A stretch of DNA of 64,000 nt from Octopus sinensis (taxonomy: Eukaryota), in contig NC_043003.1 in the NCBI RefSeq assembly GCF_006345805.1, positions 83,452,001 to 83,516,000 of the forward strand. The letters run 5' to 3'. Positions 1 through 45,235 of this stretch are shown in pieces (within the stretch, counting starts at the first letter, position 1; every line of letters starts with the position of its first letter). The translations under genes and the position numbers were made by a program. Under the pieces are notes generated by a model. That model saw only the letters and a program-made list of their open reading frames with translations. It made no database searches and was not told the DNA's origin.

Positions 1-2540
1 AGAACGGCTCAGTGTGCTGCCCAGGTAGACAAACTTGTCTACGACTTTCAGAATTGTTCCTTCAACCAAGATAGCTGGTTCCACATATGGACTTCCTGAT
101 GCTGGGTCGAACATTACAATAGTCTTCTCCAGACTAATTCTGAGTCCAAATGCCTTGCAAAAAGCAGAAATACGATTCATATGTATTTGCATGTCATCCA
201 CTGTAGAGTGACTAAGTCACAGTCATCTGCATAAAGGAGGTCACAAATAAGAGACTGGAAAACTTTTGAATTGGCAGCAAATCGGCGCAGATTAAAGAAG
301 CGGTCAGAAGATCGATACCTGACATATATTTCCAGAGAACTAACCTTAGCAAAAGCATGAGTAGAAGCAGCAGCAAAGTACACAGAAACGAGAGTTGAGG
401 CAAGGATGTCAACCTTCTTGACACCATTCTCTATAGGAATGAGTCCCGCTATGCCACCACCAACATTGATCTAAGCCTCCATCCCATCATGAAATGATTT
501 AAGTATAGATACAAAGTGGTCCGGACATCCAAGTTTTGCAAGTATTTTCCATAGCAAGTCTCTCTTCACAGTATCAAAGGCCTTGGTTAAAAAATGAATG
601 CCTGGACGTGATCCATATTCTTCTCATAGCACTTCTCCTGCAACTGTCTTGCTGTAAAAGCCGTTATCCATTGTTCCTCTACCAGATCGGAAGCCATATT
701 GCGATTCAGATAGGATATCATTTACGAGATACCCATTCAGGCTAGTAAGGAGATTTGCCAGCAGCTGGTGGTAAAGCAATACTTCTATATTTACCACACA
801 TTGTTCTGGCTCCTTTTTCTTTATAGAGAGGGAGAATAATTGCATCCTTCCAGTTTTTAGGCATTGCACCATCCCTTCTGACTGCACTAATAAGTTCATG
901 ATGGGACTGTATGATGTAATCACCACCAAATCGCAAAACCTCAGCACAAATTCCATCCTTTCCAGGTTCCCTACCAAGATTCAATTTATTTATTGATGTC
1001 ATCACTTCATCTATCGAGGGCGTGGAATTTAAGGAACCAATGATAGGTCTTTGTTGCATAGTATCAATCACTGTTTCATCCCTACTGACTCATGGTTTAA
1101 GAGTTCAGAGAAGTGTTCGATCCAGCGACCTGCGATTTCTGTTGATTTAGTAAATAGAGTGGAAGACTCCTTGGAAAACAAAGGAGCTGATGTGGAGCTC
1201 TTACACCCATAAACTTGCTTCATAAGATGGTAGAGCTTCTTGCTGTCATTTGCATCAGCAACAGCCTGAACATCTCGAGCAAGATCCTCCCACCAAGTGT
1301 TCTGCATCTTCTTTAGAGATCGCTGCAGTAGTGATTTTACACTGCTATAGTGGGCAAGTGCTAGATTTCTCAACACAGCTGAAAGTCCTCTGTGCAGCAA
1401 TACATTGTGGGCATGGTGCTTTACAGCCAATAGGCACCGAACTTCAGCATCATTTTCATCATATCAGTCTCTGTGTCTGGCAGTAGCATATCCCACTGTT
1501 TCAGCAACACATTGAAGAACCTGATCTCGAAAATCTTCGCATGTTGCAGTATTTTCAGTGCTGGACAAACGAGTGTGAAGCTCTTTCCTCAACACAGCAT
1601 TATTTATCTTATGGTCATTCAGACCCCGGGGAATGCTGAATGGCCCTCTCCTCTCTTTCACTGTAATCAACATTCGGAAGTTTGCTCGCACCAGACTCCG
1701 GTCTGTCCAGCATTCCGATCCATGAAAGGACTTGACGTTACAAATGTCATAGATGTCACGCTTGCGGATGATGACATAATCCAGCAAGTGCCAAACTTTA
1801 GACCTTGGTTGCATCCACGTTGTTGTGTGATCACCTTTGTACATAAAATGAGTGCTTGCGATGTAAATTCCATGTTCATCGCAAAGCTCCAGCAGCATCA
1901 GACCATTGCTATTCATTTTCCCTACAACAAAACGTCCTAGAGAGTTCCGTGTTTGCCAGTCTGCTCCAATCCTGACATTGAAATCCCCCAGTAGAATGAT
2001 TTTATCAGAATTGGGGATTTTCCTAAGTATGGCTCTCAGCTGGGTATAAAAATTAGTTTTATCTTCATCCCAACTAGTCAAAGTAAGTGCATGGGTACTT
2101 ATTAGAGCAGCAAACCACCCACCTTTCAAGTGCAATCGTAGAGGCATTAGACGTTCATTTATAGGAACAGGAAATTCCTTCAACTTTTTAAGGATATCAG
2201 ATTGAACTGCAAAGCCAACACCACCCTTCTACTTCCCCTTCCAAAAGAATGTGGTATCTCCTACTTCCTCAAGCTGACCATTACTTTCTATACGAGTCTC
2301 TGAAAGTGCAGCTATATCTGTGTTATAACGGTTCAGCTCGTGAGCAACAAGTGCAGTGCGTCTTTCAGGCCTACAATCACTTTTGTTAGCCAACAGGGTG
2401 CGCACATTCCAACATGAAATGTTCAAGTTCCATCCAGATTTTGTAAATAAAAGTCTCTTTGTTTTACGAGCGCAGGGTGGACATCCGTCAGTCGCGCTAA
2501 ATTGACCAGATATGGAAAGACAGGCAATTTTTGGGTTCAC
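1..2540 (-). pseudogene. APE endonuclease-reverse transcriptase ORF of the RTE element, broken by frameshifts
   Basis: ORF track pieces 2229-2540, 1464-2183, 1068-1430, 742-1071, 624-977 and 177-383 are successive parts of one RTE ORF in different frames. Confidence 0.9.
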
Positions 2541-30187: not shown

Positions 30188-30275
30188 CAGTTCTATATTT
30201 AAGAGATGACGAATTATGTACATTATTTACATTATTTACATTTGACGGATATTATTATTATTATCATCATCATCA

Positions 30276-30350
<75 letters not shown>

Positions 30351-30438
30351 TATTATTCAGGTCACTGCTTGGAATCGAACTCGGAATCTTGGGGTCAGTA
30401 GCCTGCGCTCTTAACCACTACGTCATATGCCCAGTGAA

Positions 30439-34920: not shown

Positions 34921-36120
34921 TACCAATCATAAATATTATGCATGATTGTTTACAAATTTTTTATGTAACACAGAAATTGAATCAGCCGGCATAAAGAGAC
35001 AAGCAATAAAGACATTCATGTGTTAATAAACGAATTATATATTAATAAACGAAAATACAAATAACAATTCTGTAAAATAAATTTCAACTTATGTTTTATC
35101 TTTCTTTTAAGTTTCTTTATACTTTCAAACATGCCACAGAGAAATTGAAATCCTGGTGACCCGAATGATGCCAGCATTCGTTTGGAGGTCGAAATGGATT
35201 CCAATTACCTACCCCAAGTCGATTGGCCTGTTAGAAATAACAGTCAAATCTCCGTTAGCTGTCTTAACGGAAGAAAGCATATGTTATGTTTGAATATAAG
35301 TTGAAATGGCCACGAATAGAATATCGTGATCAGAGATGACCTGGGACTCCAACAACAATGACGCCAGTGGTGACATGAGGGACAATTACTATATGATACA
35401 GTAAAACTTCGTGGTCAATCAGCTTTGGTTTTGGTATCTTACAACAATATTGCGACACAAACAGAAAACCTTAACATTTTTATAATAATCTATGTTGAAA
35501 CGTACTTGCTATAAATAATAAAACAGCGTATACCTCCTCTATGAAATTCTCCAAGTATTTCGTGGCTCAATGATTTTAGATGACTTTGTTTGTATTGACA
35601 ATCTAACATAATTCTTACATTGAACGAAATACTGTCATGTTTATCAGAAATGTAATAATGTTTATACACACAAGAAAATATTTTCTTTACTTTTTCCTTT
35701 TTATTTATTTTTTTTTTTGTCAAAACAATAGTCAGGATTCTGTAATATGAGTGAAGTTGTATTAACAAGTGCACATTCTATGTAAACGTCTACTGTTGCC
35801 TTAAACAAGCACATATTTCAAAAGAAAAATATATTGACAAGGTTTATCAATAAATTATGAATTTCCCCTTAAATGGACGGACATCGGAAAGAATGGCGAG
35901 ACAACTGAAGATTAGATTAGAAAGAAGTGTTGTTCTGAGCAGAAAAAAAACTGAGTAGTTGATACAGTATTCTTCAGTGTAAATGCTCTATCGATTTTAA
36001 AGACACACACTAGGCCATACTATTCTATTTGTTTCCACTCTTACCTATCCAAACTAACACAGATTGGTTATTGTTGTGTGTGTTTGTATAGATCGATAGA
36101 TAGATATATACATACATACT

Positions 36121-36164
<44 letters not shown>

Positions 36165-36272
36165 TATACATACATGTATATACATATACATATATGTACA
36201 CATATGTACATAAATATATATATACATACATATACGTATATGTATGTGTGTGTGTAATTATGTGTGGGTATG

Positions 36273-36306
<34 letters not shown>

Positions 36307-36659
36307 ATGATATGTAATCTCACCCCAAAATTTAACGCAAAACTTTACCTCTTATACATTTTGGCCATAAAAGATATGACGTCATCGAAGATAAATTAAG
36401 AATGGTAAAAGATTTATAGAACAAACTTTGAAATTTATCATCGCCTATTTGTAGTTTTCACTGTTATTTACCAATCATTTTCTGATTGATCGAACTCTGT
36501 TGACCGGCGTATGTTTAGAGATAATATAACTCTTCAATATAAAGTCATCAAAGTTGTCAGGCTTGATTAATCTTGCGATTTATCGCTAACCTCCATAAGA
36601 CAATGTTCCATTAGAGATACGGTAAACATCAAGTGGTTTTAGTCAAATGATAAGTTCGG

Positions 36660-36693
36660 CGCCTAATTATTATCGCTATTATTATTATTATTA

Positions 36694-36750
<57 letters not shown>

Positions 36751-36755
36751 TTATT

Positions 36756-36799
<44 letters not shown>

Positions 36800-36810
36800 T
36801 ATCGTCATTA
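36660..36810. repeat. (ATT)n/(ATC)n
   Basis: Seen directly in sequence. Confidence 0.95.
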
Positions 36811-37359
36811 TGCTTTCGTTCCTCTCCACGCTAGTGGTGTTTAAATTCGCTCCATGAGTCTTGAAAACGATTGTTAATTGCTTGCTCGTTTAAGGATTTT
36901 TTTTTTTAATTATTGTTTTTTTGTTTTCTTGAGGACTCGCTCATGACCGTGGTGGGGTTGTCTGTTCCTTTGTTTCTCGATACATCGAGGTTAAATCACT
37001 AAAAAAAAATCATCAAAAATTTGAAAACGTATGTAAACATACAAAATTAAACCGAGTGGGAACTGATCAAAGAAGCAGAAAGAAGGTTGCCACCAAGATT
37101 TCAGTTTTTCTGTGACACCTTTGAAAGTATAAAGAATTTTTTAAAAAACAGATAAAACAAGCTGGAATTTATTATACAGACCTGTCAATTTCTATATTCG
37201 TTTATTAATGTGAATACATGAACGTGCTGTTTGTCCCACTACTTCTACTAATGAAGACTTTTCCTACTGACCTAGTCTGCAATGCAACTACTTTCACTTT
37301 CGCGAACTCCATTGATGACAAAACCTATGGCAGTAACCACAACATACGGAGCAGCAGCA

Positions 37360-40718: not shown

Positions 40719-40809
40719 GAGTGAGAGAGCAGTGCATGCCATCAAAGTGACACTGGGGTAAAATATACGAAACCCAGTATATCCATCATGACTACCCGTC
40801 TGATAAGGG
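40719..40809. mobile_element. Left part of an interspersed repeat that hosts the LTR element
   Basis: Reads continuously into 43629-44088 across the AAGGG duplication; bounded by (TTA)n. Continuity also rests on my recollection of this repeat family. Confidence 0.7.
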
Positions 40810-41083
40810 TGTGGTTGATGAAAGGAGCACAACAGAACAAGGAAATAGGAAACAGAAGTGCAACAGGGTCTTACCTGACAGGGGATGAAGTCGGATGGCC
40901 TTCAGCCAACTTGCTCGCGTTTGGTCGTCTCGGTGCCTTGCTCCGGTCTGTCGCCACCGCTCGATGCCGCACGTGCCTTTTGTCGCTCACTTCCGCTTCC
41001 GCCGGCGCATGCGCCCTGCAAGACCTGTAAGCATCACTTCCGCTCCCGCCCGTCCCGTCACACTCCTTCATCACCACACCACA
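40810..41083 (-). repeat. 3' LTR (274 bp)
   Basis: Direct repeat of 43351-43628, differing mainly by small indels. Confidence 0.95.
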
Positions 41084-41095
41084 CGCCCCCCTGAT
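41084..41095 (-). promoter_or_regulatory. Polypurine tract
   Basis: Minus strand ATCAGGGGGGGCG abuts the TGTGG start of the 3' LTR. Confidence 0.75.
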
Positions 41096-41099
41096 CTAT

Positions 41100-42530
41100 A
41101 AATCACTGAACCGGCTTCCTCACTCGCTCCCGCATTTCGTCCTGGGCACGTACCAGTTCCCCCTGACCGGGTCTTCCGCTCTTGTCCTCTCTAGGATCTC
41201 CTGCATCATCGCCACCGTCCCTTCTCCCACCTTGTCGCCCCACCTCTCTCCTTCTGCTCGTCTCTTGGTGAAACTACACGCGTGCGCAGCCATCCAGCGA
41301 TCGGTAGTGACCGACCAACTTCCCACACACCGAGAACAGCTCTCTCCTGCTGACGCTGGAACTCAGCTCTGGGATTTCATTTCCTCTCCGGAACACCAAT
41401 TCACCTGATCTATCTCTTCGCAGCTTCAGCCCCAGCGCGGCTCCCCCTTCAATCGACTCCGGTGGCTTAGCAATCAGTCCGAACTTCTCCATGTCTCACT
41501 ACCTCGTTGGCTGCCACTACAGTGTCGTCCACCAAAATGTCGTCAATGTAGGAGCTGGTGGCCTTTCTGATCTTGCCGTCTTTCCCTAGGACGACCTAAG
41601 CACTGCCGCCATGATCTTCGGAGCAGAATTCAGCCCGAAACCCAGCCTGGTTAGACAGTACGTCCGGCCCTTGTACCGCACCAGCTGATATCGCCATAGT
41701 TTGTCGCTCACATGGAGCTGCAAGTATGCCGATCTCAAGTCGACAATCGTCGCTGCCTCAGTCGACTGTCTCCACTTGCGTAATGCCTCACCACAAACGT
41801 CTGTCGCCTCACCTCCCGTGTGAACACGATATGTGCTGGTTTAGCTCCCTGAAGTCCAGCACCGGTCTGACTTTTCCCTTCGTAGGCTGCACCCCGCCAT
41901 CAGGGGTAGCACTCCGCCCGCTACCTCCTCCTTCCAAGGGACAAGGACCCCTTCCTCGATCCACCTCTCCACCTCGTCTTCAAACTCAACCCTGGCGTGG
42001 CCTTTCAGAGTATGCTGTAACAGCTCACCCTGTTCTCCATGTCGGGGGCTCGCCCTTCCATTTCCACTCTATCGTCCACCGCTGACCATCGAACGCCGCT
42101 GAAAGTCCTTGTCCTCGATGGTAAAGCGGCGCCGTCCCTCGCGGGGCTCTGCTCCCTCTGTTGATCCTGACTCGCAGTGCACGACGCCCCCACGCTTCGA
42201 ACGTGACCTTATTTCCCCACAACGCTGACGCCACCGAGGCAGTTGATGGCGTCCATCCCCATCACCACATCAACTCCATTTATCACACGTTCGGCCACAA
42301 TTGCCTGTAGCCTTAGTGTCGCGCCGCGCACCACTATCTCTACCGTGCTGCTGCCTCTGCAACGGATTTCGCTGCCGTCGACCGCCCGGACACTACACAC
42401 CCCACCGTTCCTTCCTTCGTCACCCTCGAAGTCACCAGGGTGGTCGTACAGCCCGTATCCACGAGGGCTCTTGAACGCCTCCCCCTCGGCCTCCACGTCA
42501 ATCACTGGCAGTGTCTCCAATAGCGCCTCT
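41100..42530 (-). pseudogene. pol: pol remnant: aspartic protease and reverse transcriptase, frameshifted, truncated at the RNase H start
   Basis: ALVDTGC (DTG at 42451-42459); VDLRSAYLQL; TRLGFGLNSAP; SYIDDILV (YIDD at 41539-41550); stops at GNWYVPRTK, before the expected CDAS motif. Confidence 0.9.
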
Positions 42531-43295
42531 ACTTCGTTTGAGGGAAAGTTCGAGAGGCAGCAACTTCCCGCCGCGGTCGTTTCCCTGGCCGCAATCACGG
42601 GCAATGTGCCCTGTCTGCCTGCATCGATAGCAACTGGCCGGCCCCGCTGCGTACAGTCCCGCGCCATGTGCGGTCCTTGGCATTTAAAACATCGTCCTGA
42701 GAACGGCCGCTCTCGTTGCACGGTGGGCTTCCGTACCTCTTTCTCGAGACGTCGTCCGTCTTTACGCGCCTCCGTCACCGCCATCACTATCCCCTTCCGC
42801 CCCGAGTGTCTCGTCAACCCGCGAGCATGAGTTACAAGCTCGCTCAATGGCATCTTTTTGACCCCGGCAGTTGTTGTAGGTGAATCCCTACATCATCGGG
42901 GAACCCATTTACAAATGCCAGTCGGGCTGCTCTCTCCATTCCTTCTCTCCGCAAACCCGCCAGAGTCGCTAGCCTTCTAGCTTCCGCCGCAAAATCATCC
43001 ACCTGGCCTCCCGTCCACCTGATTGCACCCAGCTTAGCGAAAGCTGTGTACTCGCATTCTGTGTATGCGTCACACAAGCGCCGCTCTATATCCCCATCGC
43101 AGAGCCGTTCTTTTTCGTCCATTTCCAGGTAAAGCGACAACGCACTTCCTTCCAATACAGGGCCATAAGACTCGCCACGTCGCTTATGCCCTGCAGTCTC
43201 GCCACCAGCCTGATTTTCTGAATCCAGGCCACTACATCGCCTTCGCCGTTAAAAGGTCTGACGACGTCACTGGCGATCCTAATTTTTGCCGACAT
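42530..43295 (-). pseudogene. gag: gag with two CCHC zinc knuckles, frameshifted
   Basis: MSAKIRIASDVVRPFNGEGDVVAW..; CFKCQGPHMARDC and CYRCRQTGHIARDC lie in adjacent frames. Confidence 0.9.
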
Positions 43296-43338
43296 CGTGT
43301 TGACAAAAATGTTGAAAAAAATGTGAACGCTGACTAAT

Positions 43339-43350
43339 GCCGAAATAGCT
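43339..43350 (-). promoter_or_regulatory. Non-canonical primer-binding site AGCTATTTCGGC, complementary to tRNA-Phe nt 1-12
   Basis: Immediately follows the 5' LTR on the minus strand; plus strand reads GCCGAAATAGCT, the 5' end of metazoan tRNA-Phe(GAA) as I recall it. Confidence 0.75.
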
Positions 43351-43628
43351 TGTGGTTGATGAAAGGACAAACAGAACAAGGAATAGGAAACAGAAGTGCA
43401 ACAGGGTCTTACCTGACAGGGGATGAAGTCGGATGGCCTTCAGCCAACTTGCTCGCGTTTGGTCGTCTCGGTGCCTTGCTCCGGTCTGGTCGTCGCCACC
43501 GCGCTCGATGCCGCACGTGCCTTTTGTCGCTCACTTCCGCTTCCGCCGGCGCATGCGCCCTGCAAGACCTGTAAGCATCACTTCCGCTCCCGCCCGTCCC
43601 GTCACACTCCTTCATCACCACAACCACA
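43351..43628 (-). repeat. 5' LTR (278 bp)
   Basis: Perfect 8-bp terminal inverted repeat TGTGGTTG/CAACCACA. Confidence 0.95.
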
Positions 43629-44088
43629 AAGGGTACACTAGGCACATGCATCACAACCATATGTGCGCGACATGGTGATCTCATATCAAGATAAACAGCA
43701 CATGACCTTGCAGGTGGGGCCCAGTTACAATTTTGTTCTGGTCGAGTAGCCCATCCCGCTCAAAAGGTCCCTGAATAAGGGTTGTTTAAGGATGTTGAAC
43801 GAAACACCCCTCTTTCCAAAGGTGAATTATTCAAACCCCAAGGAATCTCTCTAACACATGGCTATGATGATCCCCCACTACTTCTGCTCGTGATCAGAGA
43901 TGCAGATATCGTCAGCCACTAAGGGACATGCTCAACTGGTTAAGGTCAAACAACTGACAGGCAAATCTATGGTATTGAGCAGAATATTTGCTGTAGCCCG
44001 TAGCCCACAGACAAAACAATGTACATCATAACACTTGCAATCAGTTAAGATCAGTAGCCATGAAAGCCACTGCCTGGTACTGCATCAG
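43629..44088. mobile_element. Right part of the host interspersed repeat
   Basis: Starts with the TSD AAGGG and ends at (ATT)n; noncoding. Confidence 0.7.
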
Positions 44089-45044
<956 letters not shown>

Positions 45045-45073
45045 CATTATTATTATTATCATTATTATTATTA

Positions 45074-45127
<54 letters not shown>

Positions 45128-45129
<2 letters not shown>

Positions 45130-45235
45130 TCTCTTTATATTCTGCAGGTGTTAAGACTCTCCACCCTGAGATTAGGTGGTCTATCGTTTCAATCTCATCG
45201 TTACAGAATCGGCATTTTGGGTCAGCTCCATTTTT
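45128..45235 (-). repeat. Duplicate of the ~105-bp 5' end (zinc knuckle) of the 44130-44893 element, embedded in (TAA)n
   Basis: Nearly identical to about 44788-44893, with the same junction to (TAA)n. Confidence 0.9.

What the first reader, a model, noticed from the sequence alone, without database searches (positions are those of the whole stretch)
43339..43350. Gypsy element whose PBS is complementary to the 5' end (nt 1-12) of tRNA-Phe: candidate priming by a tRNA 5' fragment
Seen: the LTR boundary is fixed by the 8-bp TIR, the second LTR and the AAGGG TSD. The next 12 nt on the sense strand are AGCTATTTCGGC, with no TGG. Established: canonical PBSs begin with TGG and pair with the tRNA 3' CCA end. 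Metazoan tRNA-Phe(GAA) begins GCCGAAAUAGCUCAG (recalled from human and Drosophila, not searched). Copia primes from an internally cleaved tRNAiMet, and Tf1 primes from the first 11 nt of its own RNA released by RNase H. The match starts exactly at tRNA nt 1, and nt 12 pairs with the base next to the LTR, which is the geometry needed to extend a 12-nt 5' fragment. The LTR has no copy of GCCGAAATAGCT, so Tf1-style self-priming is not supported. Inference: a trans version of Tf1 priming, in which the tRNA 5' end anneals and is cut after nt 12. I do not know whether this has been described.
Basis: partly seen in the sequence, partly recalled or inferred. Interest (0 to 1): 0.88.

Follow-up and report, generated by a model that had tools for sequence, protein, structure and literature searches.

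The report
Retroelement primer site matching tRNA-Phe 5' end
A defective retrovirus-like mobile element and eight relatives carry, where the reverse-transcription primer must bind, 12 bases that pair with the first 12 bases of phenylalanine tRNA instead of a tRNA 3' end, which suggests a fourth, apparently undescribed way of priming.

Summary
On the minus strand, a 2.8-kb LTR element (LTRs 43351-43628 and 40810-41083, 5-bp target duplication CCCTT) has AGCTATTTCGGC directly after its 5' LTR. This is the exact complement of nt 1-12 of metazoan tRNA-Phe(GAA). There is no TGG, and the LTR holds no copy of the complement.

New evidence comes from eight related elements in other assemblies, whose LTRs are otherwise unalignable. 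All carry a 12-mer of the form AGCTA-NNNN-GGC at the same place, straight after the LTR's terminal ACA. In three of them the 12-mer is the entire leader before the gag ATG. The invariant bases pair with tRNA-Phe nt 1-3 and 8-12. The four variable bases pair with nt 4-7, which are the positions that vary among the eukaryotic tRNA-Phe genes I recovered. One recovered gene (GCCGTGATAGCT) pairs with the commonest variant site through 11 Watson-Crick pairs and one G·U.

Tf1-type self-priming, canonical 3'-end priming and copia-type half-tRNA priming all fail their tests. Use of a 12-nt tRNA-Phe 5' fragment as primer is the best explanation, but it is inferred, and how the tRNA is cut is unknown. 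The element belongs to a distinct DUF7047-bearing lineage with Gypsy/retrovirus gene order, and it cannot be shown to be a classical Gypsy. I found no precedent in the searchable literature.

The parts
43629..43633 (-). Target-site duplication, upstream copy (CCCTT on the sense strand, AAGGG on +)
   Evidence: Read directly. The identical 5-mer lies at 40805-40809.
43351..43628 (-). 5' LTR (278 nt), TGTGGTTG...CAACCACA
   Evidence: Repeat pair; LTR alignment about 97% identical; sequence.
43339..43350 (-). Primer-binding site AGCTATTTCGGC, complementary to nt 1-12 of tRNA-Phe(GAA)
   Evidence: tRNA sequence; homologous 12-mers in eight relatives.
43296..43338 (-). Short untranslated leader between the primer-binding site and the gag ATG; contains no TGG
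   Evidence: Read directly.
42498..43295 (-). gag, broken by frameshifts; N-terminal motif shared with relatives; two CCHC zinc knuckles
   Evidence: ORFs; zf-CCHC hits; tblastn of the gag N-terminus to the loci.
42209..42497 (-). Aspartic protease region (DTG motif), spread over two frames
   Evidence: weak gag-asp_proteas / Asp_protease_2 hits.
41352..42000 (-). Reverse transcriptase remnant with stops and frameshifts
   Evidence: Three-frame translation; 12 homologous RT fragments; RT profile hits.
41274..41351 (-). First 17 profile positions of DUF7047, the lineage's hallmark domain; the coding region is truncated after it (no RNase H, no integrase)
   Evidence: Pfam PF23088, E = 1.6e-4, residues 48-64 of the ORF. 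Intact relatives continue with RNase H and integrase.
41084..41097 (-). Polypurine tract AGATCAGGGGGGCG (plus-strand primer)
   Evidence: Read directly. Nearly the same tract lies before the 3' LTR of L007.
40810..41083 (-). 3' LTR (274 nt)
40805..40809 (-). Target-site duplication, downstream copy (CCCTT)

Best explanation
The 12 bases after the 5' LTR are the element's minus-strand primer-binding site. They are used by pairing with the 5'-terminal 12 nucleotides of cytoplasmic tRNA-Phe(GAA): the 5' strand of the acceptor stem (nt 1-7), nt 8-9, and the first three bases of the D stem (nt 10-12). The inferred course is as follows. Gag's zinc-knuckle chaperone opens the acceptor and D stems. 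The site takes the place of the tRNA's own 3' acceptor strand. A cut between U12 and C13 leaves a 12-nt RNA with a 3'-OH next to U5. That cut could be made by the element's RNase H on the RNA duplex, as Tf1 does on its own RNA, or it could already be present in a host-made 5' fragment. RT extends this primer into U5-R. Later, plus-strand strong-stop synthesis copies the 12 RNA bases and stops at the tRNA's physical 5' end, which regenerates the site for the second strand transfer. Shown here: the position, length, boundaries and conservation of the site, and its complementarity to tRNA-Phe 5' ends. Inferred: that it primes, and where and by what the tRNA is cut. This is a property of a whole lineage of animal LTR elements marked by DUF7047, not of this one copy.
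For: 1) There is an exact 12/12 complement to tRNA-Phe nt 1-12, starting at nt 1 and abutting the LTR's terminal CA.
2) Eight related elements were found: L001, L004 and L007 from ENA assemblies, and L008, L009, L011, L012 and L013 from JGI metagenomes. Their RT is 55-71% identical to the window's. Each has a 12-mer directly after an LTR ending in ACA: AGCTATTTCAGC, AGCT-TTTCGGC, AGCTATCTAGGC, AGCTATCGCGGC (four times) and AGCTAACACGGC. In the alignment, only ACA, AGCT and the last C of the site are invariant. The GG before that C is shared by seven of the eight ungapped sites and is a CpG-type G-to-A change in L001. The flanks do not align.
3) In L012 the gag ATG follows the 12-mer directly. 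In L008 and L013 it follows after 1 nt, and in L009 after 4 nt. There is no room for any other primer-binding site.
4) The L007 boundaries are independently fixed by its LTR pair, the duplication ATCTG and a polypurine tract.
5) tRNA-Phe(GAA) genes recovered from unrelated eukaryotic contigs begin GCCGGGATAGCT, GCCTTGATAGCT, GCCGAGATAGCT, GCCGAGGTAGCT, GCCGTGATAGCT and GCCGACTTAGCT. That is GCC-NNNN-TAGCT, constant where the sites are constant and variable where they vary.
6) The L019/L020 tRNA-Phe (5' GCCGUGA, 3' strand UCGCGGC) pairs with the commonest variant site AGCUAUCGCGGC by 11 Watson-Crick pairs and one G·U. The last 7 bases of that site equal the tRNA's own 3' acceptor strand. L013 matches the same tRNA at 11 of 12 positions, and L007 matches the L016 type at 11 of 12.
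7) The other tRNAs in the same cluster fit worse; Lys-CTT has 3 mismatches.
8) No LTR in any of the nine elements contains the complement beyond chance.
9) Established knowledge: nt 1-12 of eukaryotic tRNA-Phe carry only m2G10, which still pairs with C. Tf1 uses an 11-nt RNA primer released by RNase H from an RNA duplex.
Against: No experiment supports it, and no primer has been mapped. The host tRNA-Phe of the window and of every relative is unknown: no tRNA gene lies in the window or in loci L001-L013. No recovered tRNA gene begins exactly GCCGCGATAGCT or GCCTAGATAGCT. The co-variation is therefore a match of patterns across unlinked samples, not host-by-host pairing. Several copies are old and mutated (L001 has a CpG-type change, L004 a 1-nt deletion, and L007's LTRs are 95% identical). 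No nuclease is known that cuts a tRNA after nt 12; known 5' fragments are 14 nt or longer. Only nine elements were examined. Conservation of AGCT next to the LTR could in principle serve another cis function.
Confidence: 0.7

Rival explanations
1. Tf1-type self-priming: the 12-mer pairs with the first bases of the element's own transcript, which folds back and is cut by RNase H. The tRNA-Phe match would be coincidental.
For: The site is short (12 nt; Tf1's is 11), lacks TGG and abuts the LTR, as in Tf1, Tj1 and sushi elements. L004's LTR contains a 7-nt piece of its own complement, GCCGAAA, 270 nt upstream.
Against: In the window's LTR the longest exact piece of the complement is 4 nt. In all nine elements the best matches (4-7 nt) are no better than shuffles (fraction of shuffles reaching them 0.09-1.0). 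The L004 piece is absent from its sister copy L001. Self-priming predicts that the site co-varies with each LTR, whereas here the site is conserved while the LTRs diverge beyond alignment. A coincidental exact 12/12 match to a tRNA 5' end is very unlikely.
Confidence: 0.04
2. The site does bind the 5' part of tRNA-Phe, but only to recruit or package the tRNA, or to regulate translation of the adjacent gag. DNA synthesis would be primed in another way, for example by a different RNA 3' end or by a nick elsewhere in the annealed tRNA.
For: This explains the conservation and the tRNA-like pattern of variation without needing an unknown cleavage after nt 12. The gag ATG lies 0-4 nt from the 12-mer in four relatives.
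Against: Every LTR element needs a primer site next to U5, and in L008, L012 and L013 there is no other non-coding sequence. The complementarity ends exactly at the LTR boundary, which is the geometry of a primer 3' end. Plus-strand transfer needs a copied primer segment of just this kind.
Confidence: 0.12
3. The primer is some other small RNA whose 3' end happens to read ...AUAGCU, or the 12-mer is a conserved cis element unrelated to priming, such as a dimerisation or packaging palindrome around AGCT.
For: AGCT is a palindrome, and it is the most conserved part of the site. No host small-RNA data were available.
Against: The conserved GGC at the far end, the fixed 12-nt length and the window's full 12/12 identity to tRNA-Phe are not explained. 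No abundant RNA with such a 3' end is known to me.
Confidence: 0.06
4. Chance: a decayed or accidental sequence next to the LTR of a dead element, with the true site lost.
For: The window copy is defective and truncated.
Against: The LTRs are about 97% identical and the site is intact. The same site is found in eight relatives from at least four other assemblies. The chance of the match is about 3e-6.
Confidence: 0.01

Closest known systems
Tf1/Tf2/Tj1 and other Tf1/sushi-group self-priming elements
   Same: Both have a short site of 11-12 nt with no TGG, directly after the LTR. In both, the primer is the 5'-terminal 11-12 nt of an RNA, which must be released by an internal cut. In both, plus-strand strong-stop synthesis would end at the physical 5' end of that RNA.
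   Different: In Tf1 the RNA is the element's own transcript, acting in cis. Here no LTR has the complement, and the sequence is that of a host tRNA, acting in trans. The RNase H here is of a different type (PF00075/RVT_3 matches), and there is no chromodomain hit.
copia, 1731, Ty5, Tca2 and plant Osser/Bianca 'half-tRNA' priming
   Same: The primer is a 5' fragment of a host tRNA produced by an internal cleavage, not the CCA end.
   Different: Those fragments are about 39 nt long, are cut in the anticodon stem-loop and pair through the anticodon-stem region of tRNA-iMet (or Arg or Ile); see PMC6317226 and PMC4139406. Here pairing is with nt 1-12 of tRNA-Phe, including the very 5' end, and the implied cut is in the D stem.
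Canonical tRNA 3'-end priming (retroviruses, Ty1, Ty3, gypsy)
   Same: A host tRNA is the primer, the site abuts U5, and a zinc-knuckle Gag is available as chaperone.
   Different: There is no TGG and no pairing with the CCA end. The opposite strand of the acceptor stem is used, and the tRNA would have to be cleaved.
Odin retrotransposons and lokiretroviruses (PMC9040795)
   Same: Both are animal LTR elements with gag-pol and no env, with an extra domain between RT and a cellular or retroviral-type RNase H. The integrase's best matches among solved structures are retroviral integrases.
   Different: Relatedness was not tested here. Odin was reported only from sea anemones, and that paper does not discuss primer-binding sites.

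Membership tests
Canonical tRNA 3'-end-primed LTR elements | The site starts with TGG within a few bases of the LTR and pairs with the 3' CCA end of a tRNA | tested here: not met
   There is no TGG between the LTR and the gag ATG in the window or in the eight relatives.
Half-tRNA (copia/Ty5-type) priming | The site is complementary to the anticodon stem-loop region of tRNA-iMet (or Arg or Ile) | tested here: not met
   Complementarity is to nt 1-12 of tRNA-Phe. The only other complementary stretches of 7 nt or more are single chance-level 7-mers inside gag codons.
Tf1-type self-priming elements | The site is complementary to a sequence inside the 5' LTR (the start of R) | tested here: not met
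   The longest exact match in the up to 600 nt upstream of each site (the LTR and, in some loci, flanking sequence) is 4-7 nt, no better than shuffled sequence, in nine elements.
Tf1-type self-priming elements | The primer is released by the element's RNase H cutting an RNA-RNA duplex | not testable with these tools
   This needs biochemistry.
Ty3/Gypsy (Metaviridae) superfamily | Gene order gag-PR-RT-RNase H-IN between LTRs, with a short target duplication | tested here: met
   The order is seen in L007 and in eight long (982-1204 aa) relatives. The duplication is 5 bp. The window copy itself lacks RNase H and integrase.
Ty3/Gypsy (Metaviridae) superfamily | RT and RNase H group with Ty3/Gypsy (Pfam RT_RNaseH / RT_RNaseH_2 signature, RT phylogeny) | tested here: inconclusive
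   There is no RT_RNaseH or RT_RNaseH_2 hit. RNase H matches RNase_H/RVT_3. RVT_1 mostly scores below its cut-off. DUF7047 is the hallmark. The RT profile finds only 2251 proteins among 1.84 billion. No phylogeny with reference elements was made.
BEL/Pao | Pfam Peptidase_A17, DUF1758, DUF1759 and DUF5641 signature | tested here: not met
   None of these was hit in the window ORFs or in the relatives.
Proposed class: elements primed by the tRNA 5' end | The 12-mer after the LTR is complementary to nt 1-12 of the host's own tRNA-Phe | tested here: inconclusive
   The window matches the metazoan consensus tRNA-Phe exactly. Relatives match recovered tRNA-Phe variants at 11 of 12 positions, one through a G·U pair. 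No element was paired with a tRNA gene from its own host.
Proposed class: elements primed by the tRNA 5' end | Minus-strand strong-stop cDNA is joined to the 12-nt tRNA fragment | not testable with these tools
   This needs cDNA-primer mapping.

The most novel reading that the evidence does not exclude
A whole lineage of animal LTR retroelements, marked by DUF7047, starts reverse transcription from the first 12 nucleotides of tRNA-Phe. This would be a fourth class of minus-strand primer beside the full tRNA 3' end, the anticodon-cleaved half-tRNA and the self-primer. It would imply a specific cleavage of a host tRNA in the D stem, possibly by the element's own RNase H acting in trans on an RNA duplex.
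Probability: 0.45. Interest if true: 0.85.

Novelty: new variant of a known kind. Interest (0 to 1): 0.78.

Why it matters
Reviews of LTR-element replication list three primer types (PMC6317226). Annotation tools such as LTRdigest look only for tRNA 3' ends, so elements of this kind are scored as having no primer-binding site. A primer taken from the 5' end of a tRNA would add a new way for retroelements to exploit tRNAs. It would point to an unknown cleavage after nt 12, by either an element or a host activity. It would also suggest that 5' tRNA fragments, or RNAs that sequester them, could regulate such elements, as 3' fragments do for canonical ones. The hypothesis is directly testable, because the predicted cDNA-RNA junction is exact: GCCGAAAUAGCU joined to the complement of U5.

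Tried and rejected
- The gag fragment found no homologues in the 5.8-billion-protein search.
- The scan of viral contigs with the RT alignment found nothing.
- No tRNA genes lie in the window or in the element-bearing loci, so no host-matched tRNA was obtained.
- L002, L003, L006, L010 and L018 lack the 5' end of the element (L018's gag starts at residue 44). L005's LTR-gag junction is deleted.
- Cluster look-up gave no accession numbers or sample names.
- Searches of solved structures with the RT and the DUF7047/RNase H pieces gave nothing useful, so the lineage could not be placed.
- I looked for extra complementarity between the leader or gag and other parts of tRNA-Phe. Only single 7-mers appeared (CCTTTAG in conserved gag codons, against tRNA nt 40-46), and 40-50% of shuffles do as well. 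I rejected this as evidence.
- Ten literature searches found no description of a site complementary to a tRNA 5' end. [quoted passage not shown]
- To recover tRNA-Phe genes, I searched for the open reading frame on the reverse strand of the gene. The 24-residue peptide had to be padded with X to reach the tool's 40-residue minimum.
- One search failed on a script error. I re-ran it using only the LTR piece.

Full report
**What is in the window.** The finding lies on the minus strand. Reading the sense strand, the layout is: host flank ...GTACCCTT, then a 278-nt LTR (43628 down to 43351, TGTGGTTG...CATCAACCACA), then AGCTATTTCGGC (43350 down to 43339). A 43-nt leader without TGG follows, and the gag ATG is at 43295. 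A second LTR lies at 41083-40810, preceded by the polypurine tract AGATCAGGGGGGCG and followed by CCCTT again. The two LTRs are about 97% identical and differ mainly by four small indels.

The interior is only about 2.26 kb. It holds a frameshifted gag with two CCHC knuckles, a protease with DTG, an RT remnant with stops, and the first 17 positions of Pfam DUF7047. After that the coding region is cut off, and there is no RNase H or integrase. This is a defective, internally deleted copy.

**The match to tRNA-Phe.** The + strand 12-mer GCCGAAATAGCT equals nt 1-12 of human tRNA-Phe-GAA, as printed in two papers (PMC11706605 and PMC10505166). From my own knowledge, insect tRNA-Phe has the same 5' half. 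The 12-mer occurs once in the window. The window contains no tRNA gene, so the host's own tRNA-Phe is unverified.

**Relatives.** A search with an uninterrupted 84-residue RT stretch returned 12 short RT fragments at 49-81% identity. Their contigs gave related elements L001, L004, L005, L006, L007 and L018 from two long-read ENA assemblies, and L002 and L003 from contigs labelled 'Meta.Cpag'. A scan of JGI metagenome contigs with the RT alignment gave six more loci, L008-L013. I located each gag N-terminus by tblastn and read the sequence just upstream.

Every locus that retains the 5' end shows an LTR ending in ACA, followed at once by a 12-mer:

| Element | 12-mer after the LTR | Note |
|---|---|---|
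| window | AGCTATTTCGGC | |
| L001 | AGCTATTTCAGC | a CpG-type G-to-A change |
| L004 | AGCT-TTTCGGC | a 1-nt deletion; same family as L001 |
| L007 | AGCTATCTAGGC | |
| L008, L009, L011, L012 | AGCTATCGCGGC | |
| L013 | AGCTAACACGGC | |

In the alignment of nine sequences, only ACA, AGCT and the last C of the site are invariant, and the flanks on both sides do not align. The A after AGCT is shared by the eight ungapped sites. The GG before the final C is shared by seven of them, the exception being L001's CpG-type change.

In L012 the gag ATG follows the 12-mer directly. In L008 and L013 it follows after one base, and in L009 after four. The 12-mer is therefore essentially the entire non-coding space in which a primer-binding site could lie. 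For L007 the LTR ends are independently fixed by the LTR pair (95% identical), a 5-bp duplication ATCTG and a polypurine tract nearly identical to the window's.

**Does the variation look like tRNA-Phe?** The conserved bases pair with tRNA nt 1-3 (GCC) and nt 8-12 (UAGCU). The variable four pair with nt 4-7, the inner acceptor stem. To see how real tRNA-Phe genes vary, I used the fact that the reverse strand of a eukaryotic tRNA-Phe gene is an open frame. A protein search for that peptide, padded with X to the minimum length, returned 75 spurious ORFs lying over tRNA-Phe genes. Most read ...TELFR, which is what the metazoan 5' end predicts.

I fetched several variants and confirmed them as tRNA-Phe(GAA) with ARAGORN:

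- GCCGGGATAGCT (L014, L015)
- GCCTTGATAGCT (L016)
- GCCGAGATAGCT and GCCGAGGTAGCT (L017)
- GCCGTGATAGCT (L019, L020)

One more variant comes from L021, one of seven loci (L021-L027) that encode the same spurious ORF. Its tRNA-Phe-like gene begins GCCGACTTAGCT and carries an insertion in the T arm, and ARAGORN does not call it in any of the seven.

Eukaryotic tRNA-Phe 5' ends are thus GCC-NNNN-TAGCT, the same pattern as the complements of the nine sites. The L019/L020 gene sits in a cluster of animal-type tRNAs. Its acceptor stem is 5' GCCGUGA paired with 3' UCGCGGC, with a U5·G68 wobble. The commonest variant site, AGCUAUCGCGGC, pairs with its nt 1-12 through 11 Watson-Crick pairs and the same G·U, and the last seven bases of that site are identical to that tRNA's own 3' acceptor strand. 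L013's site is an 11/12 Watson-Crick match to the same tRNA. L007's site is an 11/12 match to the L016 type. Lys-CTT from the same cluster would have three mismatches.

This is co-variation at the level of pattern, not proof host by host. I could not obtain a tRNA gene from the host of any element, and no recovered gene begins exactly GCCGCGA or GCCTAGA.

**Rivals.**
- *Tf1-type self-priming* requires the complement of the site inside the LTR. In the window's LTR the longest exact piece is 4 nt. In the other eight elements the best pieces (5-7 nt) are no better than shuffles. The 7-mer in L004 is absent from its sister copy L001. Self-priming also predicts co-variation of the site with the LTR, yet here the site is held while the LTRs diverge.
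- *Canonical priming* fails because there is no TGG.
- *copia/Ty5-type priming* fails because the pairing is not with the anticodon-stem region.
- *Extra contacts* between the leader or gag and tRNA-Phe were only chance-level 7-mers.
- *Chance* is excluded by the conservation.
- *What remains open* is whether the tRNA 5' segment is really the primer, or only a bound ligand, and how a 3'-OH at nt 12 arises.

**Mechanism proposed.** Everything in this section is inferred except the sequence geometry.
1. The site invades the acceptor stem in place of the tRNA's 3' strand and continues through nt 8-12.
2. A cut between U12 and C13 gives a 12-nt primer. The cut could be made by the element's RNase H on the RNA duplex, as shown for Tf1 (from my own knowledge of the Tf1 work, not checked here), or it could be already present in a host fragment.
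3. RT extends the primer into U5.
4. Plus-strand strong-stop DNA later copies the 12 RNA bases and stops at the tRNA's 5' end, which supplies the 12-nt overlap for the second transfer.
5. Nt 1-12 of eukaryotic tRNA-Phe carry only m2G10, which still pairs with C (established knowledge).
6. If the primer is copied in this way, sites of the CACGGC type (L013) and the CGCGGC type (L008 and others) could both arise in hosts with a GCCGUGA tRNA-Phe. This is a speculation that fits the data.

**What kind of element.** Intact relatives have the order gag(CCHC)-PR-RT-DUF7047-RNase H-IN. The RNase H matches Pfam RNase_H and RVT_3, not the Ty3/Gypsy RT_RNaseH families. RVT_1 mostly scores below its cut-off. 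There is no BEL/Pao signature. The integrase's best matches among solved structures are retroviral integrases. A profile of the RT core finds only 2251 proteins (219 at E ≤ 1e-30) among 1.84 billion representatives. This is therefore a distinct, moderately sized lineage. 'Gypsy' holds for gene order only, and I could not place the lineage. A relationship to Odin elements or lokiretroviruses is an untested lead.

**Precedent.** Ten full-text searches found no site described as complementary to a tRNA 5' end. A 2019 survey states that three primer types are known: the complete tRNA, the half-tRNA cut in the anticodon stem, and the self-primer (PMC6317226). The library lacks most subscription papers and Repbase notes, so earlier mention cannot be excluded. 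[quoted passage not shown]

**Verdict.** My confidence that this is a primer-binding site for the tRNA-Phe 5' end is 0.7. The cleavage step is unknown. The finding is best filed as a new variant of tRNA-primed reverse transcription, shared by a whole lineage of elements. Interest is 0.78.

Noticed in passing
L007 2488-4539; proteins P0090, P0091, P0100, P0110, P0112, P0133, P0163, P0218: The element's lineage has a fixed architecture: gag-PR-RT-DUF7047-RNase H (cellular/retroviral type)-IN. Its RT core finds only 2251 proteins among 1.84 billion, and its integrase is closest to retroviral integrases among solved structures. It may be an unplaced lineage. DUF7047 could be a tether or degenerate RNase H, as in Odin elements and lokiretroviruses.
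   Followed up: partly
L019 130-1442; L020 147-747: A very dense cluster of eight animal-type tRNA genes (Ser, Lys, Thr, Phe, Gln, Pro, Val, Arg) sits in 1.3 kb. Its tRNA-Phe has a U5·G68 wobble in the acceptor stem.
   Followed up: partly
L021 about 1505-1612 (minus strand); the same spurious ORF is encoded in L022-L027: A tRNA-Phe-like gene (5' GCCGACTTAGCT ... 3' AGTCGGCA) carries an insertion of about 29 nt in the T arm. ARAGORN does not call it. It could be a non-canonical intron or a pseudogene. Its spurious reverse-strand ORF recurs on 10 contigs from several samples.
   Followed up: no
L011 1855-1935: A tRNA-like sequence (GGACCTCGTGGCG...GGTTCGAACC...), probably a tRNA-derived SINE or a tRNA pseudogene, is inserted between the primer-binding site and the gag ATG of that element. 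ARAGORN does not call it.
   Followed up: no
window 30218-30400, 36060-36300, 36630-36850, 44080-44140, 44880-45200: There are long (ATT)n/(ATC)n and (AT)n/(ATAC)n microsatellite arrays. The window is about 35% G+C outside the element, which is 51% G+C.
   Followed up: no
window 1464-2183 (minus strand): An ORF has a weak Exo_endo_phos_2 match (endonuclease of non-LTR retrotransposons), so another mobile-element remnant is present.
   Followed up: no
window 43200-43207; L001 8866-8872; L004 2104-2110: The conserved gag codons for (K/R)-P-F contain 7 nt complementary to tRNA-Phe nt 40-48. This is at chance level (40-50% of shuffles do as well), but it recurs because the codons are homologous.
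   Followed up: yes
L009 1268-1477 and 3811-3940: An RT match is followed about 2.3 kb downstream by an LTR end, a primer-binding site and a gag start. The contig therefore holds two adjacent or tandem elements, or an assembly across a shared LTR.
   Followed up: no
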